This document shows, piece after piece, positions 16,080-31,963 of a DNA stretch of 64,000 bases; position 1 is the first letter of the stretch; the number at the start of each line of letters is the position of its first letter. Made by a program: the position numbers and the translations under genes. A model generated the notes under the pieces. The model made no database searches. It was not told where the DNA came from and saw only the letters and a list, made by a program, of their open reading frames with translations. Where the stretch lies: positions 248,001-312,000 of the IMG/VR virus record IMGVR_UViG_3300017917_002374. The stretch is one strand, 5' to 3'.

Positions 16080-17213
16080 ATGGCCACATTAAAGCCAGGA
16101 CTGAATTCTAAACAACACTTGATCACTGACAGCTTGGGCACACCAGGTCCAATAGCCTACGATGAAACACAGTACGACAGCGTGGCCAAAAAACGCAAAG
16201 AAATAGAAGACTACGTGCGTTTTCGTTTGGGCGATGGCATGGTTGATGTTGAACTGGATCCAGATCATTATAGAGTAGCTATTGATAGAGCTCTGCTGCG
16301 CTATCGTCAACGTGCTGGAAATGGCGAAGAAGAAAGTTATGCGTTTCTAGAACTTTTACCAGAAACACAAGAATACATTCTGCCAGAAGAAGTCATGACT
16401 GTACGACAGATATTCCGTAGAGGCATTGGTAGTGTAACAGGAACCACAGCTAGCCAATTTGAACCGTTTGCGTCCGGGTACTTAAACACATACATGTTGG
16501 TGGCTGGACGTGTGGGTGGATTGCTCAGTTACGAACTGTTTAGCCAATACCAAGAACTGGCCATGCGCATGTTTGGCGGACACATGAATTTTACTTGGAA
16601 TCCAATGAGCAAAAAGCTCACACTGATTCGCAAGATTCCCGAAACAGGTCATGTGTACAAGCGAATAAGTACTCTTACTGCCAGTGGTACCACAGTTGGA
16701 AGCACAATCACTGTTACATTCTCTGATCCTTGGGAAGAAATTGTGGTTGGTGGAACTTTGGTTATTGCCAACTGTCCGGTTACCGGATACAACAATGCCT
16801 ATGAAGTTCTTACTGTGGACAATGACAGCAAGGTGTTTACTGTGGAGGCACTGAGCAATCTTGGTTCCACTGCGGTAACAGGCAGCAATCGTGATCGCAC
16901 CAGAGCCTACAGTCCACTTACTGATGATCCTGCCGAAACAGTTTTGTTGCATATCTATAATAAGAAACCAGACAGCATGCTGTTGAATGACAGTAGAATT
17001 TTTCCATGGCTACAAGACTACGCACTGGCAGTTGCTAAAGACATGTTGGGTCAGGCTCGCGAAAAGTTTGCTACCATAGCAGGCCCACAAGGTGGTACTC
17101 AGCTGAACGGCGGCGCATTAAAAACCGAGGCTAAAGCAGAAATGGAAGCTCTTGAAGAAGAACTCAAGCGTTTTTACGATGGCAGTATGCCTTACACTTG
17201 GGTAATTGGATAA
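16080..17213 (+). CDS. Neck protein, T4 gp13-like, with inserted beta domain
   Basis: LGDGMVDVELD..HY..AID and C-terminal W...YALA..K..LG..R.KF...GP.GG.QLNG..L..EA..E...LE motifs. Confidence 0.85.
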   Translation: MATLKPGLNSKQHLITDSLGTPGPIAYDETQYDSVAKKRKEIEDYVRFRLGDGMVDVELDPDHYRVAIDRALLRYRQRAGNGEEESYAFLELLPETQEYILPEEVMTVRQIFRRGIGSVTGTTASQFEPFASGYLNTYMLVAGRVGGLLSYELFSQYQELAMRMFGGHMNFTWNPMSKKLTLIRKIPETGHVYKRISTLTASGTTVGSTITVTFSDPWEEIVVGGTLVIANCPVTGYNNAYEVLTVDNDSKVFTVEALSNLGSTAVTGSNRDRTRAYSPLTDDPAETVLLHIYNKKPDSMLLNDSRIFPWLQDYALAVAKDMLGQAREKFATIAGPQGGTQLNGGALKTEAKAEMEALEEELKRFYDGSMPYTWVIG

Positions 17214-17593
17214 TGAAGATAAGAGAAATTATTACTGAAGTACGAGCTGGTGACATACCTGACAATTTTAAACAGTCAAGTGCTGGCTTGCATACATTTA
17301 GTGATGCAGAAAGAGCCAATACAGACTACACTCACTACAGATTGGGATTGGCTTTGGCATGTGCAGATGGTAAAGGGCAGCTGATTGACATGGATCCAAA
17401 AACCTTTTATGGTAAGAAACACACTGCACATCCTTATACCAAAGAAGAAGAAGACATGCTCAAACAAAGCTACAAACTGGTTGGAGCAAACTATAAAGAC
17501 CTTAACAAAGGTAATTTGAATAGTATGGAAATAAGCGATACTAATAAAGTAAGCCCAACAGCCAAACCTAAGAAAAACAAATACGGTGTTTGA
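17213..17593 (+). CDS. Hypothetical protein (126 aa), capsid-targeting-like N-terminus
   Basis: TAATG coupling to the gp13 stop; starts MKIREIITE. Confidence 0.7.
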   Translation: MKIREIITEVRAGDIPDNFKQSSAGLHTFSDAERANTDYTHYRLGLALACADGKGQLIDMDPKTFYGKKHTAHPYTKEEEDMLKQSYKLVGANYKDLNKGNLNSMEISDTNKVSPTAKPKKNKYGV

Positions 17594-17618
17594 CCACCGA
17601 AGCAGTTTAGTTTATAAT
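17590..17618 (+). promoter_or_regulatory. sigma70-type early promoter
   Basis: TTGACC-17 bp-TATAAT upstream of dNMP kinase. Confidence 0.8.
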
Positions 17619-17639
17619 GCCCCTAAGGGGGCATTTTTT
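17616..17639 (+). terminator. Intrinsic terminator overlapping the early promoter
   Basis: AATGCCCC-TAAG-GGGGCATT followed by a T run. Confidence 0.7.
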
Positions 17640-18332
17640 ATGATCATAGGCATATCAGGATTTATTGGATCAGGCAAAGACACCGCAGCAAACTACTTGG
17701 TGGGCTTTCATGGATTTAGACGCGACAGTTTTGCAGGTGCGCTCAAGGATGCAGTTGCTACTGTGTTTGGGTGGGACAGAGAACTACTAGAAGGGCTTAC
17801 ACCTGAGAGCCGGGCCTGGCGAGAGCAAGTGGACACATGGTGGAGCAAACGGTTGGACATGCCGCATTTAACTCCTCGTTGGGTGTTACAACATTGGGGT
17901 ACTGAAGTTTGTCGTCAAGGGTTTCATGATGATATTTGGATTGCTGCACTTGAAAATCGTCTACGGCAACGTACCGGAAACACTGTGATAACAGATGTAC
18001 GTTTTCCTAACGAAATTAAAGCTATTCGTCGTGCTGGGGGTACTCTTTGCTGGGTCAAACGCGGATCCTTGCCCGAGTGGTACGAAACTGCACTGCTAGA
18101 AAATACCACACCTCTGGACAAGCAGTGGCTTCTAGAAGATGCGCATCAACTGATGCCACAAAAGTATCCTCGGGTGCATGCCAGCGAGTGGGCTTGGGTG
18201 GGTACACAATTTGACTACGAAATTGACAATAATGGCTCAGTTGAACAACTGTATGATCAACTTAAAAGTTTGGTTAATCCTCAGCGGCCCGCCACGGTAA
18301 ACGCTCTAGATATAATACTTTCTGGCAGTTAA
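17640..18332 (+). CDS. Deoxynucleoside monophosphate kinase (T4 gp1-like)
   Basis: MIIGISGFIGSGKDT P-loop, SFAGALKD, TPRWVLQHWGTEVCR, ITDVRFPNE, HASE motifs. Confidence 0.92.
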   Translation: MIIGISGFIGSGKDTAANYLVGFHGFRRDSFAGALKDAVATVFGWDRELLEGLTPESRAWREQVDTWWSKRLDMPHLTPRWVLQHWGTEVCRQGFHDDIWIAALENRLRQRTGNTVITDVRFPNEIKAIRRAGGTLCWVKRGSLPEWYETALLENTTPLDKQWLLEDAHQLMPQKYPRVHASEWAWVGTQFDYEIDNNGSVEQLYDQLKSLVNPQRPATVNALDIILSGS

Positions 18333-18615
18333 GACACACTGTTCTTAGATTTACTCTATCTACATTTTTTAAATTACCGTCCACATGATAAACATGCAAC
18401 TGTTGATCAGGTAATTTAGCCACAAAGCCGCAATGATCGCATGCGGCTTTTTTTCTATATCCGGCACGATACCAAGCAGGTCGTTTTGCTGGTACTTTTT
18501 TACCCTTTCTAATACAAGTGTCACACCGACTTCGGAAATGTGTGATTCCTTCTGAAATATAGTTGATTGCAACAGGACGATCGTTGCAAGCAGGGCATAA
18601 ACTTCTAATAGACAT
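18274..18615 (-). CDS. Zn-finger/HNH-like small protein
   Basis: CxxC pairs plus HVDGNLKN....NLRTVCLNC; TATAAATA immediately upstream. Confidence 0.7.
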   Translation of the reverse strand: MSIRSLCPACNDRPVAINYISEGITHFRSRCDTCIRKGKKVPAKRPAWYRAGYRKKAACDHCGFVAKLPDQQLHVYHVDGNLKNVDRVNLRTVCLNCQKVLYLERLPWRAAED

Positions 18616-18718
18616 ACGGTATTTATATACTAAACCTTTGCAAAGGGCAGTCTAGCAGCCCAAAAATGTCAGTTCCAAATAAATATCTATAACATGATTT
18701 TTGTCAAAGGAAAATAAC

Positions 18719-21700
18719 ATGGCAACTTTAGTTTCTCCAGGTCTTAGTGTAACAGTAACCGATGAAAGCCAATATGTACCAGGCGGTCCAGGAACCGTTC
18801 CGTTGGTAATTTTAGCAACTGCACAAGACAAAACTTCACCAAGTGGTGGCACCGCTACTGGCACCACAGCAGCCAGAGCAAATACTCTACAAGCATTTGG
18901 CAGTCAGCGCGAGCTGATCACAGCCATGGGATATCCCGTATTTAAAACTGCGGCTGGCAGTCCTGTACATGGCGACGAACAAAACGAATATGGATTGCAA
19001 GCAGCTTACAGTGCAATGGGCCTTGGTAACAGATGTTTTGTACTAAGAGCTGATATTGACCTCGATCAACTTACACCTACTGGAGTAAGACCAAAAGGCA
19101 ACGTTGATGATGGTTTCTACTGGTTTGATCTTACCACATCTGACTTTGGTATATTCCAGTGGAATGCATCAACACAGACTTTTACAAAACAAACAGTAAC
19201 CGTTCTAACTTCAACCGCAGACGTAAATTCTCCTGGCGGCGCCGGAGAACCATTTACTCCAAAAGACAGTGTGGGAGAAATTGGCAGTTATGCAGTAATC
19301 GCAGTAGACGACGACAATCCTCTATTTTATAAAAATGCAGACAATGCCTGGGTAGCTGTTGGATCAAAAGATTGGCAGAAGGCCTGGCCTACTGTGCAAA
19401 GTTCATATGCAACTTATGCCGGAAATGAAGTAGCAGCAGGTACTCAAGTTACTATTAATACTGTTACTGTAACAATCACAGCAGCAGGTGCGACAGCAAC
19501 AGGAACAGAAGTAGTAACTGCAATTAATGCGGCGTTCGCTGCCAACTACGGCGACGGTATCCGTGCTGAAATTGATACCAACGGAAGACTGATCATTCGC
19601 GCTACATCAGACGCAGCAAGCGATGGTAGCACAGCTGACGGTAAAGTGGTTATTGTTGACGATGCTGGTGCTGCTGACTTAGGATTAGATGGCGGTATTG
19701 AAGCGTTTGCTCCAATTCTTGATTTTGGAAAATACACAGAGGTACCAACCTTTGCAGCGTCTGAAGCCACTCCAGCACCAACTGGTAGTATTTGGGTAAA
19801 AACTTCTGTAGTAGGCAGCGGTGCTAACTGGGTAGTAAAAAGATTCAACGCATCAACTGGTGCATTTGCTACCATGGCAGCTCCGATCTACGAAGACAAA
19901 GCATCGGCCATCTATGGACTAGATCCATTAGGCGGTGGATTTAATCTAGCGGTAGGCACACTGTATGTTGACTATTCAACACTAACTGATTTTCCTGGTA
20001 CATTTAAAATTTGGCGTCGTTACAAGAGTGGCGTAACCAAGGTTACTGGATCAGTACCTGCTAATGCAAATCCATTCACCATTGGGCATACTTTTAAACT
20101 GGCTGTGACACAGCCTGAGCAAAGTACCATTGATGAATACACATTTACTATTGCTGAAACCAGTGTAGACGGTTTTGTAAAACTAATACTTGGTAAAGCC
20201 ATTCCAAATGTGTTTGCATCAAAAGAAAGTTCAGGTGCAATCAGTATCACGCACAAAGCAGGCGGAGATATCTATCTAGTAGATACTACCGCAGGGGTTG
20301 GTAATCCATTGACCAACGCTGGTTTCACCAGCAGCACCAGTGGTATTCTTGTAGAAACAGTTGGAACATATTCAGGATCTTTACTGGCCACAAACTGGTC
20401 TGTACTAGACTACACTTACAGCACTGAAGAGCCTTATGTGGCCCCTGCTGATGGTACACTATGGTACTATGGTAGTGCTGTAGAAGCAGATGTGTTAATT
20501 TGCAGTACCACTGGCTGGAAGGGATATCGCACAGTGTCAAGTGACGCTCGCGGTTATAATCTAACTCTTACAGATCCAAATGGTCCAATTTTTTCTGCTT
20601 CAAGACCAACACTACAAAGCGACGAGACAGCTCTTGTGGCAGGCGACTTGTGGGTTGACACCAGCGATTTAGAAAACTATCCTGTGATCTACAGATACAA
20701 CGGCAGCAAGTGGGTAGCCATAGATAACACAGATACCATTACTCAAAACGGTATTCTATTCGCAGACGCACGTTGGGACGCAGATGTTGATGGCAGCGGT
20801 GACAGTATTGGTGGTATCGTTGATCCAATCAGTGGCGACCTGCCAGAGATAGCAACCATGCTGTTGAGCAACTACACTGACTTAGATTGCCCAGACTATC
20901 GTTTGTATCCACGTGGTACCATTCTATGGAACACACGTCGCAACGGATTCAACGTCAAACAATATGTAAGCCAAGCATTTACAGAAGACGCTTATCCAGA
21001 TGCAGATGCCAACAGCGGAAACAATCTGGTTGGAGAAATTCCTGACATCACAGCAACTTGGGTAACTGCTAGTGGCAACCAAGATGACGGAAGTCCTTAC
21101 ATGGGACACAAAGCTCAACGTCGTATGGTAGTCAAAGCACTACGTGCGGCAGTTGACAGCAACACACAGATACGTGAAGAACAGTTCACTTTCAATCTGA
21201 TTGCTTGCCCAGGATATCCAGAGCTGTTGTCAAACATGACAGCATTAAACAATGATCGTGCAAACACTGCATTTATCATTGGCGACACTCCATTGGATCT
21301 GGTTCCAGACACAATTGAGTTAACCAACTGGAGCAATAATGTTGCTACCACTGCTGACATCTATACAGGCCTGTTCTATCCGGCAGGGTTAACAAATGAC
21401 CTAGATGGCAACGAAGTTGTGGTACCTGCAAGTCACATGGCATTAAGAGCTTTGATTCGTAACGATCAAATTGCTTACCAGTGGTTTGCCCCAGCAGGCG
21501 CACGTCGTGGATTGATTGACAATGCCACAGCAGTAGGATATCTAGACTATACCACAGGATTGTTCACTAAGATTGGTGTACGTCAAAGTCTGCGTGACAC
21601 GCTGTACACTTTAAGAGTGAATCCTGTTGCAAACTTACCTGGTTTAGGACTGGCTATTTTTGGACAAAAGACTCGTAGTCCAATTGCACAAAGCACAGAC

Positions 21701-22021
21701 CGTATCAACGTTGCACGTCTGGTTAACTATATTAGAAGCATCCTAGGTGGCATCAGCAACAGTTATCTGTTTGAACCAAATGATAAGATCACAAGAGATC
21801 AAATCAAACAGGCAATTGAAGGTGCTATGAATGATCTAGTGGCCAAGAGAGGTGTGTACGATTACCTAGTGGTTTGTGACGAAAGCAACAACACCAGTGA
21901 TCGTATTGCAAGAAATGAATTGTATGTGGATATTGCTATTGAACCTGTAAAAGCAGCAGAGTTTATTTACATTCCAATTCGCTTGAAGAACCCAGGCACT
22001 ATCGCAGGAGCAGGCACTTAA
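18719..22021 (+). CDS. Tail sheath protein (gp18-like, ~1100 aa)
   Basis: MATLVSPGLSVTVTDES N-terminus; C-terminal WFAPAG.RRG, RDTLY..RVNP, FGQKT, DRINVARL, FEPND..TR, CDESNN...I.RNEL.VDIAIEPVKAAEFIYI. Confidence 0.95.
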   Translation: MATLVSPGLSVTVTDESQYVPGGPGTVPLVILATAQDKTSPSGGTATGTTAARANTLQAFGSQRELITAMGYPVFKTAAGSPVHGDEQNEYGLQAAYSAMGLGNRCFVLRADIDLDQLTPTGVRPKGNVDDGFYWFDLTTSDFGIFQWNASTQTFTKQTVTVLTSTADVNSPGGAGEPFTPKDSVGEIGSYAVIAVDDDNPLFYKNADNAWVAVGSKDWQKAWPTVQSSYATYAGNEVAAGTQVTINTVTVTITAAGATATGTEVVTAINAAFAANYGDGIRAEIDTNGRLIIRATSDAASDGSTADGKVVIVDDAGAADLGLDGGIEAFAPILDFGKYTEVPTFAASEATPAPTGSIWVKTSVVGSGANWVVKRFNASTGAFATMAAPIYEDKASAIYGLDPLGGGFNLAVGTLYVDYSTLTDFPGTFKIWRRYKSGVTKVTGSVPANANPFTIGHTFKLAVTQPEQSTIDEYTFTIAETSVDGFVKLILGKAIPNVFASKESSGAISITHKAGGDIYLVDTTAGVGNPLTNAGFTSSTSGILVETVGTYSGSLLATNWSVLDYTYSTEEPYVAPADGTLWYYGSAVEADVLICSTTGWKGYRTVSSDARGYNLTLTDPNGPIFSASRPTLQSDETALVAGDLWVDTSDLENYPVIYRYNGSKWVAIDNTDTITQNGILFADARWDADVDGSGDSIGGIVDPISGDLPEIATMLLSNYTDLDCPDYRLYPRGTILWNTRRNGFNVKQYVSQAFTEDAYPDADANSGNNLVGEIPDITATWVTASGNQDDGSPYMGHKAQRRMVVKALRAAVDSNTQIREEQFTFNLIACPGYPELLSNMTALNNDRANTAFIIGDTPLDLVPDTIELTNWSNNVATTADIYTGLFYPAGLTNDLDGNEVVVPASHMALRALIRNDQIAYQWFAPAGARRGLIDNATAVGYLDYTTGLFTKIGVRQSLRDTLYTLRVNPVANLPGLGLAIFGQKTRSPIAQSTDRINVARLVNYIRSILGGISNSYLFEPNDKITRDQIKQAIEGAMNDLVAKRGVYDYLVVCDESNNTSDRIARNELYVDIAIEPVKAAEFIYIPIRLKNPGTIAGAGT

Positions 22022-22030
22022 TAGGCATAT

Positions 22031-22059
22031 ATTATGAAGCGGCGGTGCCGCTTCATAAT
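22031..22059 (+). terminator. 13-bp stem hairpin between sheath and tube genes (terminator or mRNA stabiliser)
   Basis: ATTATGAAGCGGC-GGT-GCCGCTTCATAAT; weak U tail; followed by TAAATA at 22075-22080. Confidence 0.6.
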
Positions 22060-22101
22060 TTGCCAAAAATGAGCTAAATAAGAATATAGGAGACAACAAA
22101 C

Positions 22102-22722
22102 ATGTCCGTAGCATCATTAACAAGATTTACAGTGCCACTGGCTTCAAGTCAGAGTGCAAGCGCACAGGGCCTTTTAATGCCAAAACTGGCATATCGTTTT
22201 AGAGTATCATTTGAACAGTTTGGAGTTAGTCAGCCAACAACAGAATTAACCAAACAGGTAATGGACTTTACTCGTCCAACTGTACAGTTTGGCGATATTG
22301 TGGTTGATGTTTACAACAGCAAAATCAAACTTGCAGGCAAGCCAGAATGGCAGGATGTTACTGTTAACTTAAGAGACGACGCAGGCGGTAATGTCAGTCG
22401 TTTGGTAGGCGAACAGTTGCAAAAGCAATACGACTTTATGGAACAAGCTAGTGCAAGTTCTGGTATTGATTACAAGTTTATCACACGTTGTGAAATGCTT
22501 GATGGCGGCAACGGCGTACTACAGCCAAACGTGTTAGAGACTTGGGAACTGTATGGATGCTATCTCCAGCAAGTAAACTATGGAGAAGTTAACTACTCCA
22601 GCGGCACAGAAATGGTTAAAATTGCTCTTACCATTAAGTTTGATAACGCAGTACAAACACCACTTGGTTCTGGTGTTGGCGGCGATGTTGGCAGACTATT
22701 AGGTATTACAGCTACTGGTTAA
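22102..22722 (+). CDS. Tail tube protein (gp19-like)
   Basis: Follows sheath; PKLAYRFRV, KLAGKPEW, LETWELYGCY, I.FDNA pattern. Confidence 0.85.
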   Translation: MSVASLTRFTVPLASSQSASAQGLLMPKLAYRFRVSFEQFGVSQPTTELTKQVMDFTRPTVQFGDIVVDVYNSKIKLAGKPEWQDVTVNLRDDAGGNVSRLVGEQLQKQYDFMEQASASSGIDYKFITRCEMLDGGNGVLQPNVLETWELYGCYLQQVNYGEVNYSSGTEMVKIALTIKFDNAVQTPLGSGVGGDVGRLLGITATG

Positions 22723-22747
22723 TCCAGACGACACACTTTTAAATTAC

Positions 22748-22770
22748 ACCCGGCTTAGGCCGGGTTTTTT
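22748..22770 (+). terminator. Intrinsic terminator
   Basis: ACCCGGC-TTAG-GCCGGGT-TTTTT. Confidence 0.9.
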
Positions 22771-22798
22771 ATGAGATAAATATCTAAAAAGAGGCATT

Positions 22799-24651: not shown

Positions 24652-24652
24652 C

Positions 24653-25090
24653 ATGGCGAGAAATTACGCACAAGGAAAATTTCAAATGCGTAATCCTGCC
24701 AAGTATATTGGCAAAGGACAACCTACTTATCGTTCAGGATGGGAAATGGTGTTCATGCAGTTTTGTGATAACAATCCTGCTATATTAAACTGGGCCAGCG
24801 AAAGTATCAACATTCCATACCGTAATCCGTTTACAGGCAAGAGCACAATTTATGTTCCTGATTTTTTAATCATCTACGAAGATAAAAATGGGCAAAAGCA
24901 TGCAGAAGTAATTGAAATCAAGCCCAGTACAGAATCCACAATGGAAAGTGCTCGCAACACAAGAGATCGTGCTTATGTAGCACTCAATCATGCCAAATGG
25001 GCAGCAGCGCAGGCTTGGTGCAAACAACAAGGCTTGACCTTTAGAGTAATAACAGAGAATCAAATCTTTCATCGGGGTCAAAAGCGGTAA
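24653..25090 (+). CDS. Head completion protein, T4 gp4-like (TnsA-type nuclease fold)
   Basis: NPAKYIG...YRSGWE..FM.FCD.NP.IL.WASE...IPY...Y.PDF...IEIKP...N.AKW.AA..WC. Confidence 0.88.
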   Translation: MARNYAQGKFQMRNPAKYIGKGQPTYRSGWEMVFMQFCDNNPAILNWASESINIPYRNPFTGKSTIYVPDFLIIYEDKNGQKHAEVIEIKPSTESTMESARNTRDRAYVALNHAKWAAAQAWCKQQGLTFRVITENQIFHRGQKR

Positions 25091-25097
25091 ATACCGT

Positions 25098-25586
25098 ATG
25101 ACCAAAAAACTAGAACAATTGTTTGACTTACCTAGTGTTCCTGAAGCTATAGAAACCATAGAAGAACACCGATCCACTATACAAAACATAGATCTTGCGA
25201 TAGACAAGATAGATGCAGCACTGCCCACTGTACGAGATCTTGAAACAGCTGATCAAGAAATGGACGAGTTGGCAACTCTAGCAAGAGACAAATTTGACGA
25301 CTTAATGGATCTGGGCATGAATGTAGAACCCAGATATGCAGGTGTTATATTCCAAACAGCAGGGGTGTTGCTAGGACATGCAATCACTGCCAAGCAGGCC
25401 AAATTAGACAAGAAGCTGCGCATGGTTGATCTGCAACTGAAAAAAATGCGCTTGGATCAGACTGCAGAAAAGAATTCAGATACGACATCTGCGGTAGAAG
25501 GACAAGGCGTGGTACTGGACAGAAACGCCTTACTAGCAGAAATATTGGGCAAGCGACCAGATAATCAAAAAGATAACAAAGCATAA
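25098..25586 (+). CDS. Probable terminase small subunit (gp16-like)
   Basis: Size 162 aa; helical D.L.DLGMNVEPR.A...F..A..L...AK..K coiled pattern resembling gp16; late promoter directly upstream. Confidence 0.5.
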   Translation: MTKKLEQLFDLPSVPEAIETIEEHRSTIQNIDLAIDKIDAALPTVRDLETADQEMDELATLARDKFDDLMDLGMNVEPRYAGVIFQTAGVLLGHAITAKQAKLDKKLRMVDLQLKKMRLDQTAEKNSDTTSAVEGQGVVLDRNALLAEILGKRPDNQKDNKA

Positions 25587-25608
25587 ATAGATAGTATAGG
25601 ATCCTGCA

Positions 25609-26247
25609 ATGAAAACCTTTAAAACATACTTGCAAGAAAGTGTCAAAACCTACAGTTTCCGTGTGCGTTTGGCTGATTGTGATTGCACAGCTGAACTCAT
25701 GGACAAGATAGAACAAGCACTGTCTGCATTCAAACTGGTAGATATTACCAAACCCAAGAGCTTGCCAATAGCTCGTACCAATGAATTTTATAAACTAGGT
25801 CCAGTGGGGCGTAACAGTTTTGACATAACCACAGCATACCCTGCAAATCCTCCTCAGGTACAGCAGGCCATTCACAACTGTTGCGGAGTACCAGTTAGTC
25901 ATATCTATGTGACTTACGCGGGCGCAGACGATCAGGATGCAGCAGTAGAAGCAGCACCTGAGCACACAGATAGTGGCAAAGCTCTATTAGTGGATCCTGA
26001 ACTAAAACAAGACGACAACAACGCACAAGATCACGTGGGGCTGAAAAAAATTGATAGCCTGTTAAAAGAGCTTGAGAAGAACCGCGGCGTTCAATCTCAG
26101 TACAAAGGAATCAACGACGACATTCTCGCAAAGAGTGAGGCTAAAGAAAGCGAATCTAAAACAACCAATAGCCTGCCACAAAACAATCGCAGTCCGGTCA
26201 CAGACACTGGTAGCAAAGCAACTACTAAAAAAGTAAAGGCACTATAA
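25609..26247 (+). CDS. Hypothetical, probable internal head protein
   Basis: TAAATA at 25584; starts MKTFKTYLQES (T4 CTS-like). Confidence 0.7.
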   Translation: MKTFKTYLQESVKTYSFRVRLADCDCTAELMDKIEQALSAFKLVDITKPKSLPIARTNEFYKLGPVGRNSFDITTAYPANPPQVQQAIHNCCGVPVSHIYVTYAGADDQDAAVEAAPEHTDSGKALLVDPELKQDDNNAQDHVGLKKIDSLLKELEKNRGVQSQYKGINDDILAKSEAKESESKTTNSLPQNNRSPVTDTGSKATTKKVKAL

Positions 26248-26248
26248 C

Positions 26249-29200
26249 ATGAGCAAGCACAACGACATTTATAACATCTTGGGTAAATTGAATTCACTTA
26301 AACCTCAAGAAGAAACCAAACCCAGTATTCTAAAAGAGTTTGCTGAACCAAAGCCTGCTGATGTTGTGCAGAATCTAAATGCCAAATACCAAGAGCATAA
26401 ACAGTTGAATGAATATTTTCATTTTGACATGCCTAAAGGCAAGGATCGCGGCCCTCGCGACACAGGCACAGACGAACTAGAGCGTCGTAGCAAGCTAGGC
26501 AAAGATCCATTGGTCAAGCATGGCAAAGAATACAAAGAAAAAGATCGTTACGGTAATGGATACAAAATTGCTGGACCAAAAGGTAACTTACCCGAAGGCG
26601 ATATGGAAGAAGGACCAGCAGATCTATTGGCCGCGATTGAACAAGAAATCAATAACCCAGGTGGCAGTGTTGATAACTTGAGAGATGTCTTGAATGCTAC
26701 TTTTGGTAGCGATAGATCACCTGAATTTAAAAAAGCTCGTGCAGTCATTGGCAAGTATCTTGACTTGGTAGACAACGCTGCAATGGGTAGTGAACAAGAT
26801 GGTATTGCTCCAATGAGAGGTGGCAATATTGCTCGTCATATCCAACAATATGATCTAACTGATTATCTACAAAATGCTGCTGCTATGTTGGATAAAACAG
26901 TTAAAGGTCCAATGGACGAGAGCGGTTTGCAAGCATACCTAGGTAAAAAGAAGTACGGCGAACAAGGTATGAAGGCTCTGCAAAAGGCCGGTCGTGAAGG
27001 CGCCAGCAAAGAAAAGATGGCACAGATTCGTGCCAAGCATGACAAGCTGGACGAGATCAGTCAAGAACTTGCTGGCAATTACATGACAGCAGCAGAAAAA
27101 GACATCAAGTCAAGAAAAGAAAAAGACACATGGGATCCAAAGATCAGCAAGCGTAAAGAAGGTAAGTTCAATGCAGTACTACGCAAGACAGGTACAGTGC
27201 CTACCACAGACAATCCAACACATGGAAAGTTTATTACCAGCAAGATGGATGAAGCTGAAATGGATGAAGACATGCTGAGTCCTAAGCAGAAGAAGTTTGC
27301 AGCACTAGCTGAACCAAAAGATAAAATTACCTACGCAGACAAGATTGCAGGTGCAAAGAAAAAAGACGAAGGTAATGAATTCAGCGGCGAATTAGTAAAA
27401 GCTCGTGCGCAAGGCAAAGACAGCTTTAGTGTGGATGGTAAAGAGTATCCAGTAAAAGAAGGTTTTGAAGATCAACATGATGTTACCAACAAAGGCGAGT
27501 ACGATCAAGAAGGCGACATGGCCAAAGATGATCTCAGCACCATTGAAGATGCTGCTCGTGAGCTAGACAGTATTCTTAGTGCAGACGACAATCTGCCAGA
27601 ATGGGTACAAAGCAAGATCAACAAGGCCATGGACTATCTTGACACAGCAAGAGATTACATGAAAGCCAACACAGACGATGACAATCCTGAAATCAAAGAA
27701 GGCGAATACAAAGACTCTGTTAACAAGAGCAAGGTGCCTGCGTATCAACGCAAGGCCAAAGGTGGAGATTGGAAAGTGAGCACAAAAGATCTAGAGGACG
27801 AGGCTAGCAAGAGCCCAACTGGTCGCGCAGGATTAGAGAAACTGAAACAGCGCATGCGTGATGATGGTGTAATGGAAGGCTTCCCTACTGTAGCAGATGC
27901 CAAGGCTCGTGCAGAAAAAGAAAAAGGCACAGGCAAGTTTGATAAACAAACAACCAGTACAGGAACACGTTATACTCGCAAGCCAGAAACTTATAGCGAT
28001 GATGGCGAAGAGTCAGGTACCAGCGACGCACCTAAAAAGCGCGGCCGACCTAAGAAGCACACAGGCCCAGAGCGTGTGACCAGCAAAGCATGGAAGCACA
28101 AGGGCGGACGCAAGACCAATGAGTCTATTAAGTTGGATACATTTGTTGAAGACACAATTGGCGAACTAGATGCTCTATTATTGAGTGAAAAAGCAGTAAG
28201 CAAACAGCAGCAGAAATTCATGGGCATGGTACATGCCATGCAAAAAGGCGAGAAAGTCAAAGGCGCTAGCAAAGAATTAAAAGCAGCGGCTAAAGGCATG
28301 AGCAAGAAAGATGCCAAGGACTTTGCCAAAACCAAGCACAAAGGTTTACCGTCAAAAGTGACAGAAGGAATTAACTTTGTTGAAATGATGCGTGAGACAG
28401 ATCAGACAGTAGAAGAAATGTTAAACGAACTGCATGCTGAGCTTGATGAATACAAACGTTCAGGACAGATGGGCGACAAATTACGTGACGCTCTTGAACT
28501 GCATCGTCATAGCAAGAACAAGCTCATGGGCGAAACAAAAGAAAAAGAGAGAGACGATTTTTTCTACAATCCTGATGTGCCAGACGACCAGCAGTTGCCT
28601 GCATTACCAGACGAAGTAAAAGTTGATGTAGAGCTAGATGAACTGGCCAAGCTAGCAGGACTAGGTGAAGTCAGTCGCGGTGAATATATCAAACAACAGG
28701 ATGCACAAGCTGAACGTGCAGGCAAAGACAGTTTTAATGCATTTGGTCAAAACTTTGATACAGATCAAGTGCAAGAAGCTTCATGCAACATGACAGCGGA
28801 AGGTCAGTTCTGCCCAGAACACGGTCTAGCAGAATGTGGCAGCATGATGTATGAAAGCAAACAGTCACTAGACGAGTGCGGTGACATGGGGCCTATGGAG
28901 AAGCCAGAAAGCGGCATGAGCGTGAACACCAGTTTTGATACTAAGACCGGTCGTAAAACCATGAGCGTCACAGCCGACGGCGAAGCAGCAGAACAACTGG
29001 CACAGATGTTAAAAATGGCAGGACTGGGACATGATCATTCACACGACCACGGGCCTGAACGTAAGATTGTTATGGTACCAGAAGAAGAAGTAACTGAAGA
29101 GTTTGCAAATGAGCCAAATGAACAGTATGCAGACACACAAACAATAGTGGATGCTGGTCAAGATCTCAATCGTAAGAAAAAACAGTATGCTGACAAGCCC

Positions 29201-29293
29201 AAAGCAGGCGACAATCCAATGGCTACAGAAAATGTTCAACTAGAGGATCGTTTGGCAGCACTATATGATAGTATTAAGGTAAAATCAGAATGA
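26249..29293 (+). CDS. Highly charged multi-module protein (1014 aa), putative prohead core/internal polyprotein
   Basis: K/E/D-rich; AT-hook KKRGRPKK; DUF3008-like KAVSKQQQKFMG...KDFAKTKHKGLP; many [ILVM]xE junctions. Confidence 0.75.
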   Translation: MSKHNDIYNILGKLNSLKPQEETKPSILKEFAEPKPADVVQNLNAKYQEHKQLNEYFHFDMPKGKDRGPRDTGTDELERRSKLGKDPLVKHGKEYKEKDRYGNGYKIAGPKGNLPEGDMEEGPADLLAAIEQEINNPGGSVDNLRDVLNATFGSDRSPEFKKARAVIGKYLDLVDNAAMGSEQDGIAPMRGGNIARHIQQYDLTDYLQNAAAMLDKTVKGPMDESGLQAYLGKKKYGEQGMKALQKAGREGASKEKMAQIRAKHDKLDEISQELAGNYMTAAEKDIKSRKEKDTWDPKISKRKEGKFNAVLRKTGTVPTTDNPTHGKFITSKMDEAEMDEDMLSPKQKKFAALAEPKDKITYADKIAGAKKKDEGNEFSGELVKARAQGKDSFSVDGKEYPVKEGFEDQHDVTNKGEYDQEGDMAKDDLSTIEDAARELDSILSADDNLPEWVQSKINKAMDYLDTARDYMKANTDDDNPEIKEGEYKDSVNKSKVPAYQRKAKGGDWKVSTKDLEDEASKSPTGRAGLEKLKQRMRDDGVMEGFPTVADAKARAEKEKGTGKFDKQTTSTGTRYTRKPETYSDDGEESGTSDAPKKRGRPKKHTGPERVTSKAWKHKGGRKTNESIKLDTFVEDTIGELDALLLSEKAVSKQQQKFMGMVHAMQKGEKVKGASKELKAAAKGMSKKDAKDFAKTKHKGLPSKVTEGINFVEMMRETDQTVEEMLNELHAELDEYKRSGQMGDKLRDALELHRHSKNKLMGETKEKERDDFFYNPDVPDDQQLPALPDEVKVDVELDELAKLAGLGEVSRGEYIKQQDAQAERAGKDSFNAFGQNFDTDQVQEASCNMTAEGQFCPEHGLAECGSMMYESKQSLDECGDMGPMEKPESGMSVNTSFDTKTGRKTMSVTADGEAAEQLAQMLKMAGLGHDHSHDHGPERKIVMVPEEEVTEEFANEPNEQYADTQTIVDAGQDLNRKKKQYADKPKAGDNPMATENVQLEDRLAALYDSIKVKSE

Positions 29294-29910
29294 AAAGTCT
29301 AAAAGAATATATCGCCGAAAGCGAGTTCACTTTAGAAAATCCTGTACCAGGAGATGTGTTTGGTCTTGAACTTAGTACCGACGTGCTTATTGAAAGTGTA
29401 GTAGGAGAACTATTAGAGGATGGATCTCCTGTGGTTGAGTTAGATGCTCGTGCCATTGAGATTATGGAAAGCATGGGGTGGGTATTTGAAGATGTTGCAC
29501 CTGTGCCAACTGACAGCATAAGTCCAATACACGGTAATGCATTTGCTCCTTATCATCGTGAACATGACCCACGCGAATGGTTCCGTAAAGATGTACATGA
29601 AGAAGAGCAAGACGAAGAAGCAGAAGATGAAACTGTGACCGAAGCAGAATACAGAGGTCGCAAGGTGCCGTTAGGCAAACCAATGGCAGGCGATGTAAAA
29701 AAGAAAAAAGTTTATGTACGCAAGCCCAACGGCAGCATTGTAAAAGTAAATTTTGGCCATGGCGGAACCAGTGCCAAAAAAGCAGGTCAAAAGACCATGC
29801 GTATTAAAAAATCAAACCCTGCACGTCGCAAGAGTTTTAGAGCTAGACACAACTGTGACAATCCTGGACCACGCTGGAAAGCAAGGTACTGGAGTTGCAG
29901 AGCTTGGTAA
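29290..29910 (+). CDS. Probable internal head protein with basic C-terminal domain
   Basis: Starts MKSLKEYIAE; C-terminal EAEYRGRKV.L.KP...VKVNFG...ARRKSFRARHNC...ARYWSC..W. Confidence 0.7.
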   Translation: MKSLKEYIAESEFTLENPVPGDVFGLELSTDVLIESVVGELLEDGSPVVELDARAIEIMESMGWVFEDVAPVPTDSISPIHGNAFAPYHREHDPREWFRKDVHEEEQDEEAEDETVTEAEYRGRKVPLGKPMAGDVKKKKVYVRKPNGSIVKVNFGHGGTSAKKAGQKTMRIKKSNPARRKSFRARHNCDNPGPRWKARYWSCRAW

Positions 29911-29928
29911 TATAAACAAAGGTCAATT

Positions 29929-30762
29929 ATGAAAAAATGGTTTTCAATTCTGCTACTATCTCTAGTGGCAACTCCAGCAGCAGCATGGGATCAATGGGCA
30001 CCGCAGCCTATTAATGCTTGTAATGTTCAAGCACCATACGGTTTTCCTAAAGCATCGCGAGGCGATCTTATGGGCAACAGTCAGGCAATATGCCGTCATG
30101 CCTATGTTACATTACATGATAATGTGGCAAAGATTCCTGTGTGGGTCAGCTACACATTGCAACCACAAAATGCATTAGGCTGTGTCCCACGTTCAAACGG
30201 ATTCATGCCAGACAACAGTTTGCCAAAAGGTAAACGTGCAGAATTGTCTGATTATGCCAAGAGTGGATATGACATTGGACATGTGGCTCCTAATGGCGAC
30301 ATGAGTTTTGATAATCGTGCAGAGTTAGAAAGTTTTTTGTTAACCAACATGTATCCACAACTGCCTGGGTTGAATCGTGGCATCTGGAAGTTGTTGGAAA
30401 CTGCAACAAGAGGCTGGGCGGTTCAAAGAGGACATGCGATAGTAGTATACGCTGGGGCTATATATGGCACTGGTGACAAAACCATTGGTGCGAATCAAGT
30501 GGTAGTACCACGTGCGTTTTATAAGATTGTAACAGACACCACTACAGGTGAAGTTATGGCATTCTTGTTCAAGCACGAAGGCGGGCAAGGCAATGACCTG
30601 ACCAAGGTACGTGCAAGTTTAGACACAGTTGAAAAACTCAGCGGTGTGGCTTTTAGTTTTCCTGCTAATGCTAGAGAAGTGCCATTGAATCAAATATGGC
30701 CAGTAGACTATGGAGCACTAACAAATGCAAAAAGAGCCAAATGCAAGGGAACCGGAGAATAA
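29929..30762 (+). CDS. DNA/RNA non-specific endonuclease (NucA/EndoG family) with signal peptide
   Basis: GYDIGHVAP (DRGH-like), SFLLTNMYPQ...NRGIW..LE, VPRAFYKI; N-terminal MKKWFSILLLSLVATPAAA. Confidence 0.9.
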   Translation: MKKWFSILLLSLVATPAAAWDQWAPQPINACNVQAPYGFPKASRGDLMGNSQAICRHAYVTLHDNVAKIPVWVSYTLQPQNALGCVPRSNGFMPDNSLPKGKRAELSDYAKSGYDIGHVAPNGDMSFDNRAELESFLLTNMYPQLPGLNRGIWKLLETATRGWAVQRGHAIVVYAGAIYGTGDKTIGANQVVVPRAFYKIVTDTTTGEVMAFLFKHEGGQGNDLTKVRASLDTVEKLSGVAFSFPANAREVPLNQIWPVDYGALTNAKRAKCKGTGE

Positions 30763-30791
30763 TCCGGATGACGATCGTCCGGTGATACCTT

Positions 30792-31001
30792 ATGGACAAC
30801 ATTGAAGAACTACAAGTATTGGCCGGCATAAAAAACCGGCCTTTGTTCACAGAGTACAAAGGACACTCTGGTAGCAACATCAGTGTGACTGGAAATGAAA
30901 AAGGTCAATTGATGAAAAAATTAAACATCAAACCAGGAACTGAAGAATGGTTCAAACTGTGGTTTAGCAAACCATATCTCACAGGCGAAAAGCCAGTTTA
31001 A
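30792..31001 (+). CDS. Small hypothetical protein (69 aa)
   Basis: ORF with EELQVLAGI motif and IKPGTEEWFKLWF C-terminus. Confidence 0.7.
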   Translation: MDNIEELQVLAGIKNRPLFTEYKGHSGSNISVTGNEKGQLMKKLNIKPGTEEWFKLWFSKPYLTGEKPV

Positions 31002-31963
31002 TCTAAAAATTTAACTTTACGTTTTTCAAACTTGGTGTTGGTTTCGGCGCGAGCATTTTTGAATCCCACGTCCGGACGATCAAGCATGTATCTTAACACT
31101 AGATAAGGTTCGTAATCGCCGGATGGAGTATCGCCATTGGCAAAAACCTGTTGTGCTGTTAACTGATACCCTCTTCCGGATTTTGCAATTTTAGGATAGC
31201 CTGCAAGTACCACATCAACATTGCTAATGCCCGGTTGCCCGCTAAAAAAGTTTTTTCCAAACACAACAAGATTTTTAATGTCATTGCTTGGATGCAACCC
31301 AAATGCCTGTCCACTTTGAAATACACCGCCGGTTTCGGCTTTAATTTTAGATAGCCATTGTTGAATTTCAGGCAAATTTATAAGATGATTCCAACCGCCA
31401 TACTTGGCAAAATTGTCAGCTTTTAGACTTACCCAGGCAACTGCATGACCATTTTCGTCATACACTGTCATGTCGCTTTTTGGAGCACGGCCATTAATTA
31501 ATTCTGTGGTTTTACCAAATGTAGCCGCTTGTACAACACGTTTGCCAATCTTAAGTGGGATACTGGATTTACCGAGTTTTTGTTTGATAGCTTCAAGCTC
31601 GCCAGACAGCCCGTCAATTTGCAACTGTTCTATAGCCACACGTTTGCCTGACTCTTCGCCGCCAAATTCTGCAGTCTTGATGATACTACCTAGTGGAATT
31701 TCTCGTGGAGGTTCTTCTGCTGTTTTCAGCTTTAGATTTGGTCTAGGAGAAGTTTGGGTCCACGCAGAAAAACGATCCGCTTCGGCAGGATCAATAACTA
31801 CATCTTCAACACCCTGTGTGGTTTTGACTTTAAAAGGACTGCCTGATTGTATTTTTTGAATAACAATAGGCACCCGAGCCTTTGGTGTACCTTCGTACTT
31901 GAAAAGTCCGGGTGCTAATGGAGCTTCGTTAACTGGCTCTTGGGTAACTTCTGTTATACGCAT
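30998..31963 (-). CDS. Putative PD-(D/E)xK-like nuclease, late expressed
   Basis: PKSD.....VSLK motif; starts MRITEVTQE; TAAATA 5 nt upstream of the ATG. Confidence 0.5.
   Translation of the reverse strand: MRITEVTQEPVNEAPLAPGLFKYEGTPKARVPIVIQKIQSGSPFKVKTTQGVEDVVIDPAEADRFSAWTQTSPRPNLKLKTAEEPPREIPLGSIIKTAEFGGEESGKRVAIEQLQIDGLSGELEAIKQKLGKSSIPLKIGKRVVQAATFGKTTELINGRAPKSDMTVYDENGHAVAWVSLKADNFAKYGGWNHLINLPEIQQWLSKIKAETGGVFQSGQAFGLHPSNDIKNLVVFGKNFFSGQPGISNVDVVLAGYPKIAKSGRGYQLTAQQVFANGDTPSGDYEPYLVLRYMLDRPDVGFKNARAETNTKFEKRKVKFLD

What the first reader, a model, noticed from the sequence alone, without database searches (positions are those of the whole stretch)
17213..31963. Family of late genes with T4 capsid-targeting-sequence-like N-termini, including a putative nuclease
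Seen: MKIREIITE (17213), MKTFKTYLQES (25609), MKSLKEYIAE (29290) and MRITEVTQE (31963, minus strand). Established: T4 internal proteins use a ~10-aa CTS (MKTYQEFIAE) removed by gp21. Inference: these four unrelated proteins are packaged and injected. The 30998..31963 product has a PKSD...SLK PD-(D/E)xK-like motif, making it a candidate injected nuclease.
Basis: partly seen in the sequence, partly recalled or inferred. Interest (0 to 1): 0.6.

Follow-up and report, generated by a model that had tools for sequence, protein, structure and literature searches.

The report
T4-style capsid address tags, jumbo phage
Four unrelated late genes of an uncultured 355-kb T4-related jumbo phage start with a short tag like the one phage T4 uses to load proteins into its head, and one of them has the fold of a restriction-type nuclease, so the phage probably carries protein cargo with its DNA, though no experiment has shown this yet.

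Summary
All four ORFs exist with the stated N-termini. Two of them (MKSLKEYIAE, MKTFKTYLQE) match the T4 IPII/IPIII tag MKTYQEFIAE at every position that T4 genetics found to matter.

The window lies in a 354,959-bp IMG/VR phage. That phage encodes a gp21-type prohead protease, a scaffold, an MCP and a gp55-like late sigma factor. Its closest cultured relative is Pseudomonas phage PA5oct.

- **Not paralogs:** the four proteins share nothing beyond the tag.
- **Conserved tag:** each family keeps the tag, ending in (I/L/V)xE, across homologs down to about 30% identity.
- **Late expression:** three of the four sit in operons headed by T4-type late-promoter boxes.
- **Wider set:** about a dozen more genes in this genome carry the same tag.
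- **Indirect virion evidence:** four tagged proteins of this genome have PA5oct homologs, and all four homologs are flagged as found in virions by mass spectrometry (p≈0.002).
- **Nuclease fold:** the 321-aa protein folds confidently into an SH3-like barrel plus a restriction-endonuclease-like domain. The nearest structures are MspI, HhaI and HinP1I. It has an invariant SD…SxK motif and an invariant Glu on the first helix.

Packaging, cleavage, injection and nuclease activity are all still inferred. This is a new member of a known kind.

The parts
17213..17593 (+). 126-aa ORF with a 9-residue tag, MKIREIITE (17213-17239). It is translationally coupled to the neck/adaptor gene at 16080-17213.
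   Evidence: Searches give the ORF and the TAATG overlap. More than 170 IMG/VR relatives were found, and nearly all small homologs start M[KR][IAV]x[ED][IF][IL]xE. There is no Pfam or PHROG hit.
16055..16061 (+). ATAAATA box (T4 late-promoter core) 19 nt upstream of the neck gene. It heads the operon that contains the 126-aa ORF.
   Evidence: 31 of 58 ATAAATA copies in the genome lie within 40 nt upstream of a called start, against 1.2 expected. A gp55-like late sigma factor is encoded at genome 224264-225154.
25583..25589 (+). ATAAATA box 20 nt upstream of the 212-aa ORF. It heads the tightly packed gene run 25609-29910.
   Evidence: The same box and spacing are kept in relatives L092-L098.
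25609..26247 (+). 212-aa ORF with a 10-residue tag, MKTFKTYLQE (25609-25638). Its first five residues are identical to those of T4 IPI.
   Evidence: Homologs start MKTFKTYLQE, MKKFKDYLTE or MKNFKEYLFE. It is a weak full-length homolog of PA5oct gp282, at the same map position, E 5e-5; gp282 is a virion protein by ESI-MS/MS.
26249..29293 (+). 1014-aa highly charged protein lying between two tagged genes. It has no T4-type tag of its own. It is the positional counterpart of PA5oct gp281, a virion protein by MS.
   Evidence: DUF3008-like stretch at residues 644-724. Searches show the positional match and the N-termini MSKHNDIY.. against MFNINDIL... The sequence similarity to gp281 is not significant.
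29290..29910 (+). 206-aa ORF: 10-residue tag MKSLKEYIAE (29290-29319), a small N-domain (GDxFxxEL), an acidic variable linker, and a very conserved basic C-terminal domain (residues ~113-206, phrog_7595).
   Evidence: alignment A3. The AF2 model has pLDDT 62; only the N-domain (residues 20-62) is confident. The C-domain also occurs alone, without a tag (L063, 89 aa), and in pelagiphages, roseophages and Nitrosopumilaceae viruses.
30998..31963 (-). 321-aa ORF with a predicted 13-residue tag MRITEVTQEPVNE (31925-31963), then APL...
   Evidence: E13 is invariant across 51 homologs and is preceded by L/I/V/F at P3. Residues 1-10 are disordered in the model (pLDDT 47). PHROG phrog_13937, function unknown.
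31664..31918 (-). N-terminal SH3/Tudor/Hfq-like beta-barrel of the 321-aa protein (residues ~16-100).
   Evidence: model. Z 3.0-3.6 to SAWADEE, BAH, chromo, Hfq, Tudor and PAZ domains, which is weak.
31028..31654 (-). Restriction-endonuclease-like (PD-(D/E)xK) domain of the 321-aa protein (residues ~104-312). Candidate active-site residues are E112 (31628-31630), D164 (31472-31474), S179 (31427-31429) and K181 (31421-31423).
   Evidence: AF2 pLDDT is 91. VIA-align gives MspI Z 7.4, HhaI Z 7.1 and HinP1I Z 5.8, followed by many other PD-(D/E)xK nucleases. Foldseek's best hit is HinP1I at E 0.015. E112, K162, D164, S179 and K181 are invariant in 51 sequences. D164 opens a strand and K181 closes the next one, as in HhaI's SD-X11-EAK motif (PMC7026639).
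29929..30762 (+). Neighbouring gene, not tagged: a DNA/RNA non-specific endonuclease (Endonuclease_NS) with a hydrophobic, signal-peptide-like N-terminus.
   Evidence: (E 8e-41), and (N-terminus MKKWFSILLLSLVATPAAAW).
24653..25090 (+). T4 gp4-like head completion protein. Context: head and packaging module.
   Evidence: Tn7_TnsA-like_N; phrog_218, head closure.
32519..34084 (+). Large terminase subunit. Context: 54% identical to PA5oct TerL.
   Evidence: The probable ATG at 32519 was read.

Best explanation
The four ORFs are unrelated late proteins. Each carries a short N-terminal address tag of the T4 capsid-targeting-sequence type. The tag reads M, K/R, two hydrophobic residues three apart, and then (I/L/V)-x-E.

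The likely sequence of events is as follows.
1. The genes are transcribed from T4-type late promoters together with the neck, tail and packaging genes.
2. The tag binds the scaffolding core while the prohead assembles, so the protein is enclosed in the head.
3. The phage's gp21-type serine protease then cuts after the Glu. The predicted cuts are ITE|V, LQE|S, IAE|S and VNE|A. This frees the mature protein inside the head.
4. The protein leaves with the DNA at infection.

The cargo of the 321-aa gene is a two-domain protein: an SH3-like barrel plus a restriction-endonuclease-like domain related in fold to the monomeric enzymes MspI, HhaI and HinP1I. It most likely binds or cuts DNA early in infection.

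**Shown here:** the tags, their conservation, the unrelatedness of the proteins, the protease gene, the promoter boxes, the fold, and the virion status of homologs in PA5oct.

**Inferred:** scaffold binding, cleavage, packaging of these particular proteins, injection and catalysis.
For: 1. **Match to T4.** IPII and IPIII start MKTYQEFIAE, and IPI starts MKTFKEF...ITE. T4 genetics assign residues 4 and 7 to targeting and residues 8 and 10 to processing (PMC9026906). MKSLKEYIAE and MKTFKTYLQE fit at all four positions. MKIREIITE fits with one residue less spacing.
2. **Protease.** A Peptidase_S77 protease lies at genome 236195-236833 (E 4e-28), next to scaffold-like and MCP genes. T4 gp21 cuts after Glu in I/LxE motifs (PMC12991175).
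3. **No paralogy.** All-against-all blastp of 21 tagged proteins found only one match, 25 N-terminal residues shared by two of them.
4. **Tag kept while the rest diverges.**
   - In the 321-aa family the tags read MR[FA]xEF...(L/I/V)xE|APL. Spacer length varies, and E13 is invariant in 51 sequences, down to 27-30% identity.
   - The 126-aa, 206-aa and 212-aa families behave the same way.
   - In a pattern-selected subset of the 126-aa family, the kept residues use several synonymous codons. P2 varies freely both there and in the unfiltered homolog list. This points to selection on the peptide.
5. **Enrichment.** 7 hits against 1.6 expected (p=0.001).
6. **Late-promoter boxes.** ATAAATA boxes head the operons that contain three of the four genes. 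A gp55-like sigma factor is present.
7. **PA5oct evidence.** PA5oct is the closest cultured relative (TerL 54% identical). Four tagged proteins of this genome have PA5oct homologs: gp282, gp279, gp247 and gp223. All four are flagged ESI-MS/MS in virions, against a background of 93 of 461 (p=0.0017). PA5oct's own tagged proteins gp333, gp279 and gp104 are also MS-positive.
8. **Disordered tag.** The tag is disordered in the high-confidence model of the 321-aa protein.
Against: - There is no direct evidence for packaging, cleavage or injection of any of the four proteins.
- Only one of the four (the 212-aa protein) has a PA5oct homolog. That homolog's N-terminus (MKSFRDYYDA) lacks the (I/L)xE site.
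- The PA5oct virion list also contains obvious cytoplasmic enzymes such as RNR, thymidylate synthase and ligase. An MS flag is therefore not proof of specific packaging.
- Three of the six PA5oct genes that fit the tag rule are MS-negative.
- The 321-aa tag has Val or Thr where T4 has Ile/Leu. Its gene is on the opposite strand, with only a TAAATA 5 nt before the ATG. Its phiM12 homolog has no tag.
- Several other tagged proteins in the genome look like metabolic enzymes (a nucleotidase, a cytidylyltransferase), which is unusual head cargo.
- The genome-wide enrichment is modest and rests on a crude gene call.
Confidence: 0.6

Rival explanations
1. The conserved N-terminal peptide is functional but is not a packaging tag. 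It could be a short amphipathic helix used for another purpose, such as recognition by a protease or unfoldase, oligomerisation or membrane association. The proteins would then act in the cytoplasm.
For: - Some tagged proteins carry metabolic-type domains: NT5C nucleotidase and cytidylyltransferase-like.
- Three PA5oct genes with the tag are not MS-detected.
- PA5oct encodes ClpX/ClpA/ClpS-like proteins, so N-terminal recognition by other machines is conceivable. That link is my inference.
Against: - The tag matches the T4 capsid-targeting sequence at the experimentally defined positions (PMC9026906).
- It always ends in the gp21-type (I/L/V)xE site.
- Tagged genes cluster in the late and structural modules.
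- All four tagged proteins with PA5oct homologs correspond to virion-detected proteins.
Confidence: 0.2
2. The resemblance is chance, or a by-product of translation-start preferences such as A-rich codons after the ATG. It would then have no meaning at the protein level.
For: - Many phage proteins start MK.
- The genome-wide excess is only 7 against 1.6, or 11 against 3.4.
- Shine-Dalgarno sites are weak in this genome.
Against: - Amino-acid classes are kept while the codons differ: AAA/AGA/CGA at position 2, ATT/ATA/ATC at the Ile positions, and GAA/GAG at the final Glu (a pattern-selected subset).
- In the unfiltered homolog list the x position also varies while the kept positions hold.
- The tag persists in homologs at 30% identity, with spacers of variable length.
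Confidence: 0.06
3. This rival concerns the 321-aa protein only. It may not be head cargo. It could be a cytoplasmic DNA-binding or DNA-cutting protein, for example part of a mobile HNH-linked cassette inserted beside the terminase gene. It could also be an inactive restriction-fold domain.
For: - It lies on the minus strand together with an HNH gene, inside an otherwise plus-strand module.
- The second acidic residue of the motif is Ser.
- The phiM12 homolog lacks the tag, and the cyanophage matches cover only the nuclease domain.
- The fold Z-scores are middling, 5.8-7.4.
Against: - All 51 close and distant homologs from metagenomes keep a tag ending in an invariant Glu.
- D164, S179, K181 and E112 are invariant, which argues for a working site.
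- The tag is disordered and separate from the fold.
Confidence: 0.35

Closest known systems
T4 internal proteins IPI, IPII, IPIII (and Alt) with their capsid targeting sequence
   Same: - A short N-terminal propeptide of the same composition.
- Hydrophobic residues at the targeting positions.
- An (I/L)xE processing site.
- A tag shared by otherwise unrelated proteins.
- A gp21-type protease and a scaffold in the same genome.
- Late expression.

(PMC9026906, PMC3012670.)
   Different: - The host phage is a 355-kb jumbo phage only distantly related to T4.
- A 9-residue variant of the tag (M-K/R-h-x-E/D-h-h-x-E) is commoner than the 10-residue T4 form.
- Tag length varies from 9 to 16 residues within one family.
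- The cargoes are larger (126-780 aa) and are not all basic.
- None is a sequence homolog of IPI, IPII, IPIII or Alt.
Virion proteins of Pseudomonas jumbo phage PA5oct (gp282, gp279, gp247, gp223, gp333, gp104)
   Same: - The gene order from the neck gene to the terminase gene is the same.
- gp282, gp279, gp247 and gp223 are homologs of tagged proteins of this genome.
- Most begin with a tag of the same kind.
- All six are flagged ESI-MS/MS in virions.

(PMC7318152.)
   Different: - The PA5oct paper, as far as the held text shows, does not discuss such tags or N-terminal processing.
- gp282 lacks the xE end of the tag.
- Three of the window's four proteins have no PA5oct homolog.
Ejection proteins of phiKZ-like giant phages (SPN3US, phiKZ) with protease-removed propeptides
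   Same: Many head-internal proteins are processed by a gp21-related prohead protease after Glu and are delivered to the host (PMC5694885, PMC10052503; abstracts seen).
   Different: From my own knowledge, those propeptides are long, are cut at (S/A/G)xE, and show no T4-like 10-residue tag. This phage instead has T4-type head and late-transcription genes.
Monomeric type IIP restriction endonucleases MspI, HhaI, HinP1I
   Same: - They are the best structural matches to residues ~104-312.
- An 'SD' precedes strand beta2 and an 'xK' ends beta3, as in HhaI's SD-X11-EAK motif.
- A first helix carries a conserved Glu.

(PMC7026639.)
   Different: - There is no sequence similarity.
- Ser replaces the second acidic residue.
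- An extra N-terminal SH3-like barrel and the tag are present.
- No adjacent methyltransferase exists, so this is not a restriction-modification system.
- Z is only 5.8-7.4.

Membership tests
T4-type capsid-targeting-sequence (CTS) proteins | N-terminal propeptide of about 10-19 residues resembling MKTYQEFIAE, with hydrophobic residues at the targeting positions (4 and 7 in IPIII) | tested here: met
   PMC9026906. The 206-aa and 212-aa ORFs fit position by position. The 126-aa and 321-aa ORFs fit with one residue less spacing.
T4-type capsid-targeting-sequence (CTS) proteins | Tag ends in a gp21 cleavage site, (I/L)-x-E | tested here: met
   The sites are ITE, LQE and IAE. The 321-aa protein has VNE at residues 11-13, with E13 invariant and L/I/V/F at P3 in 51 homologs. 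Specificity: PMC12991175.
T4-type capsid-targeting-sequence (CTS) proteins | Same genome encodes a gp21-family prohead protease and a scaffolding core | tested here: met
   Peptidase_S77 at genome 236195-236833, over the Pfam cut-off. Portal, small core-like ORF, scaffold-like ORF, protease and MCP stand in PA5oct order.
T4-type capsid-targeting-sequence (CTS) proteins | Tag shared by proteins that are otherwise unrelated | tested here: met
   All-against-all blastp of 21 tagged proteins found no similarity beyond the N-terminus.
T4-type capsid-targeting-sequence (CTS) proteins | Late expression together with head genes | tested here: inconclusive
   ATAAATA boxes head the operons of three of the four genes, and a gp55-like sigma factor is present. 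No transcript data exist. The 321-aa gene has only a TAAATA 5 nt before its ATG.
T4-type capsid-targeting-sequence (CTS) proteins | Protein present in the mature head with the tag removed | not testable with these tools
   Only indirect evidence exists: four PA5oct homologs of tagged proteins are MS-detected in virions. No N-terminal peptide data are available.
T4-type capsid-targeting-sequence (CTS) proteins | Protein ejected into the host with the DNA | not testable with these tools
   No data.
PD-(D/E)xK restriction-endonuclease-like nucleases | Core alpha-beta-beta-beta-alpha-beta fold | tested here: met
   The model has pLDDT 91. The top three of 48,161 chains are MspI, HhaI and HinP1I (Z 7.4, 7.1, 5.8). 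Most further hits are PD-(D/E)xK nucleases. Foldseek's best hit is HinP1I. The Z-scores are moderate.
PD-(D/E)xK restriction-endonuclease-like nucleases | Catalytic D ... (D/E)-x-K on strands beta2 and beta3 | tested here: inconclusive
   D164 and K181 are invariant and sit at the expected strand ends. The middle residue is an invariant Ser179, not an acid. An invariant E112 on the first helix could supply the missing carboxylate, as described for residue migration in Cfr10I (PMC2441816). The geometry was not checked because no coordinates were available.
PD-(D/E)xK restriction-endonuclease-like nucleases | Metal-dependent nuclease activity | not testable with these tools
   Needs an enzyme assay.
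Type II restriction-modification system | Cognate DNA methyltransferase encoded next to the nuclease | tested here: not met
   The neighbours are an HNH gene, a 69-aa ORF and an Endonuclease_NS gene. The nearest methyltransferase-like ORF (39081-39863) is 7 kb away.

The most novel reading that the evidence does not exclude
A whole clade of uncultured aquatic jumbo phages, relatives of PA5oct, may use a readable N-terminal address tag to load 15-20 different proteins per genome into the head. The cargo would include large enzymes and a restriction-type nuclease. The phage would then inject an 'offensive' nuclease with its DNA to cut host or competitor DNA, while its own DNA is spared, perhaps through base modification. 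If so, the injected proteome of such phages could be predicted from sequence alone.
Probability: 0.25. Interest if true: 0.7.

Novelty: new member of a known kind. Interest (0 to 1): 0.5.

Why it matters
If the tag works as in T4, it gives a simple sequence rule for listing the proteins that a large, mostly uncultured group of jumbo phages carries into the cell. That list is normally obtainable only by virion proteomics.

It also points to unusual cargo: a restriction-fold nuclease, a widespread small basic domain, and several 400-800-aa proteins of unknown function. These are likely to act in the first minutes of infection, in host takeover or counter-defence.

PA5oct is cultured and already has virion MS data, so the prediction can be tested directly.

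Tried and rejected
- **Paralogy.** Rejected. blastp found no similarity among 21 tagged proteins apart from one 25-residue N-terminal match.
- **Near-identical phage records.** None found.
- **Pfam.** Nothing for any of the four proteins, even at E≤1 on the mature parts. PHROGs gave only families of unknown function.
- **Profile search of the 321-aa family against PDB sequences.** Only chance hits, E>0.3. The nuclease assignment therefore rests on fold alone.
- **ESM Atlas for the 206-aa protein.** Only unnamed viral clusters.
- **AF2 of the 206-aa protein.** Poor outside the small N-domain (pLDDT 62), so I ran no fold search on it.
- **Complex prediction (protease with the first 40 residues of the 206-aa protein).** No verdict.
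- **PA5oct supplementary MS table.** Not held. I used the ESI-MS/MS flags in the RefSeq record instead.
- **Tag against MS flag within PA5oct.** Only 3 of 6 hits at or near annotated starts are MS-positive. That is suggestive but not significant.
- **Own-DNA modification as protection from a packaged nuclease.** QueC- and QueD-like genes are present and a QueE-like N-terminus was seen, but there is no TGT/DpdA hit. The idea is left open.
- **HinP1I papers.** PMC1074309 and PMC1363774 are not held. That MspI and HinP1I have Asn/Gln at the middle motif position is from my memory only.

Full report
**What the window is.** The window is bases 248001-312000 of a 354,959-bp IMG/VR virus record with direct terminal repeats. 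It is a jumbo myovirus of the wider T4 superfamily.
- Within the window it encodes a neck/adaptor protein, a dNMP kinase, a tail sheath, tube proteins, a gp4-like head completion protein, a large terminase, and gp32-, UvsX- and UvsY-like proteins.
- About 10 kb upstream of the window lie a portal, a small ORF, a scaffold-like ORF, a Peptidase_S77 (T4 gp21-type) prohead protease and the major capsid protein.
- A gp55-like late sigma factor is also present.
- No near-identical phage record exists.
- By terminase, the closest cultured relative is Pseudomonas phage PA5oct at 54% identity. The gene order from the neck gene to the terminase gene is the same in both phages.

All four ORFs are present with the stated N-termini. 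Their start codons are supported by overlap with, or closeness to, the stop of the preceding gene. I read the T4 reference directly from the T4 record: IPII and IPIII begin MKTYQEFIAE, and IPI begins MKTFKEF... with ITE at residues 17-19. A review of the T4 work states that residues 4 and 7 of the IPIII tag carry targeting and residues 8 and 10 carry processing (PMC9026906).
- MKSLKEYIAE and MKTFKTYLQE have a hydrophobic residue at positions 4 and 7, I/L at position 8 and E at position 10.
- MKIREIITE shows the same pattern with one residue less spacing.
- MRITEVTQEPVNE also shows the shorter targeting-part spacing, with its conserved (V)xE site at residues 11-13.

**More than chance.** I wrote a rule from the T4 determinants and applied it to a crude 369-gene call of the genome. 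It finds 7 proteins where 1.6 are expected, and the four ORFs are among them. A looser rule gave 11 against 3.4. These numbers are modest. The comparative data are much stronger.
- The four proteins, and some 17 further tagged proteins elsewhere in the genome, show no pairwise similarity beyond the N-terminus.
- Each family keeps the tag in its homologs. In the 321-aa family, 51 sequences down to 27-30% identity begin MR(F/A)xEF. A spacer of variable length follows, then (L/I/V/F)-x-E, then usually APL. The Glu that aligns with E13 of the window protein is invariant.
- Nearly all small homologs of the 126-aa family begin M(K/R)(I/A)x(E/D)(I/F)(I/L)xE.
- Among those that fit that pattern, the kept residues use several synonymous codons and the x before the Glu varies freely.
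- The 206-aa and 212-aa families behave the same way.
- In the confident AF2 model of the 321-aa protein the first ten residues are disordered.

This is the signature of a peptide signal that is selected for its own sake. It is neither a shared domain nor a nucleotide-level effect.

**Late expression.** The core of the T4 late promoter, ATAAATA, occurs 58 times in the genome, and 31 copies lie within 40 nt upstream of a called start (1.2 expected). These include the neck, sheath, tube and large structural genes. One box heads the neck gene, to which the 126-aa ORF is coupled. Another heads the 212-aa ORF, which is followed without gaps by the 1014-aa and 206-aa ORFs. The 321-aa gene is the exception. 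It lies on the minus strand behind an HNH gene and has only a TAAATA 5 nt before its ATG.

**Indirect experimental support from PA5oct.** The PA5oct RefSeq record flags the proteins found in virions by ESI-MS/MS. The paper reports 93 of 461 (PMC7318152). Four tagged proteins of this genome have PA5oct homologs:

| This genome | PA5oct homolog |
|---|---|
| window 212-aa ORF | gp282 |
| genome 28988 | gp279 |
| genome 348384 | gp247 |
| genome 75442 | gp223 |

- All four homologs are MS-positive (binomial p=0.0017).
- Three of the four begin with tags of the same kind: MKLFEVFTLYE, MFLKDVKITE and MNDSIKKYISIAE. So do the MS-positive gp333 (MKINDIITE, just after the portal gene) and gp104 (MKILEFNLTE).
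- Caveats: gp282 lacks the xE end. Three PA5oct genes that fit the rule are MS-negative. The PA5oct list also holds clear cytoplasmic enzymes. No N-terminal peptide data could be read.

**The 321-aa protein.** AF2 with 51 homologs gives a mean pLDDT of 91.
- Residues ~16-100 form an SH3/Tudor-like barrel, with weak matches at Z 3.0-3.6.
- Residues ~104-312 match the monomeric restriction enzymes best among 48,161 chains: MspI (Z 7.4), HhaI (7.1) and HinP1I (5.8). A long list of other PD-(D/E)xK nucleases follows. Foldseek independently ranks HinP1I and HhaI first, though weakly.
D164, in an invariant K-S-D, opens one strand. S179-x-K181 closes the next. An invariant E112 lies on the first helix. 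HhaI has SD-X11-EAK in the same places (PMC7026639).
- The middle residue is Ser, so the canonical motif is not fully met. Relocation of that carboxylate is known from Cfr10I (PMC2441816).
- There is no sequence-level match to any solved structure, and no adjacent methyltransferase. It is therefore a restriction-fold protein but not a restriction-modification system. Activity remains to be shown.
- Homologs exist in Stenotrophomonas phage DLP6, Sinorhizobium phiM12-type phages and some cyanophages. The phiM12 homolog starts at the barrel and has no tag.

**The other three proteins.**
- *206-aa protein.* It is modular: the tag, a small confident N-domain (GDxFxxEL), a variable acidic linker and a very conserved basic C-terminal domain. 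The C-domain is found in more than 590 IMG/VR stretches, in pelagiphages, in roseophages and in Nitrosopumilaceae viruses. In some of these it stands alone without a tag. This looks like a widespread DNA-associated module that this clade has fitted with a head address; that reading is my inference.
- *126-aa and 212-aa proteins.* Neither has a recognisable domain.
- *1014-aa protein.* It lies between the tagged genes and carries no T4-type tag. It is the positional counterpart of the MS-positive PA5oct gp281.

**Verdict.** These are T4-type address tags on unrelated late proteins of a distant, jumbo member of the T4 superfamily. They are probably cut by the gp21-type protease after (I/L/V)xE. 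The set is genome-wide, about 15-20 genes, and includes a run of seven to eight large ORFs at genome 27-41 kb. The mechanism is known from T4, and T-even relatives are already known to carry diverse CTS-bearing proteins (PMC9026906, PMC3012670). I found no mention of such tags for PA5oct-type phages in the held literature. I therefore rate it a new member of a known kind, of moderate interest, and directly testable in PA5oct.

Noticed in passing
genome 27408-41349 (outside the window; locus L180): Seven to eight consecutive, tightly packed ORFs of 241-782 aa begin with tags of the same kind (MRYQDFLAE, MRYSELIEN, MRYNEIIES, MKSKDFLNE, MRYNELIEN, MRYHEIVAK, MKITEITKG). They are not similar to each other. 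One (genome 28988) is a homolog of the virion protein PA5oct gp279. One carries a 5'-nucleotidase domain and one a Pfam GP88 domain.
   Followed up: partly
genome 343763-349452 and 116136-119912 (outside the window; loci L182, L181): There are further tagged ORFs: MRVREVILE (365 aa), MRLQELGGK (228 aa, homolog of the MS-positive PA5oct gp247), MLIRELHES (126 aa), MYIFEMFE (640 aa, cytidylyltransferase-like, with an ATAAATA box upstream) and MNVFDLFEY (419 aa).
   Followed up: partly
window 29929-30762 (+): A Serratia-type DNA/RNA non-specific endonuclease has a hydrophobic, signal-peptide-like N-terminus. It sits between the tagged 206-aa gene and the restriction-fold gene. A secreted or periplasmic nuclease is unusual inside a phage packaging module.
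   Followed up: no
window 32503-32518 and 31969-31974: The HNH gene (minus strand, ATG at 32502) and the terminase gene (plus strand, probable ATG at 32519) are divergent and only 16 nt apart. The spacer reads TAAATA on both strands, 8 nt before each ATG. The 321-aa gene has TAAATA 5 nt before its ATG, and its homologs in other contigs keep TAAATA 5-7 nt upstream. If these boxes are promoters, the mRNAs would be leaderless or nearly so.
   Followed up: partly
whole genome: ATAAATA, the core of the T4 late promoter, is strongly concentrated 17-31 nt upstream of gene starts: 31 of 58 copies against 1.2 expected. Most of those genes are structural.
   Followed up: yes
window 29626-29907 (+) and loci L011-L090: The basic C-terminal domain of the 206-aa protein (phrog_7595) stays 70-80% identical across very different viral contigs, with more than 590 hits. 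It also occurs in pelagiphage podoviruses, roseophages and Nitrosopumilaceae spindle-shaped viruses, sometimes as a stand-alone 89-aa protein. Its function is unknown.
   Followed up: partly
loci L114, L116, L118, L119, L125, L132, L134, L148, L150, L156, L166: In other viral contigs the C-terminal part of the 126-aa family is fused behind a cytidylyltransferase-like domain (GRFNPPHxGH), giving proteins of 324-579 aa. These begin with their own tag, MKLRQLFENIYE or MRLRELFENIYE.
   Followed up: no
genome 194894-213760 (-), outside the window: A single open reading frame of 6288 aa.
   Followed up: no
genome 139771-140205, 141934-142830, 174308-174478: QueD-, QueE- and QueC-like genes of the preQ0 pathway are present, as in PA5oct, but no TGT/DpdA-family gene was found. 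Whether the DNA carries 7-deazaguanine is open.
   Followed up: partly
PA5oct record NC_071039.1, 179881-180267 (-), gp213: The annotated start lies five codons upstream of an ATG that would give a textbook tag, MKIKEIILE. The annotated start may be wrong.
   Followed up: no
window 32477-32518: the ORF listing starts the terminase ORF at TTG 32477, which would overlap the HNH gene. The ATG at 32519 (MSKSLEGV...) is the more likely start.
   Followed up: partly
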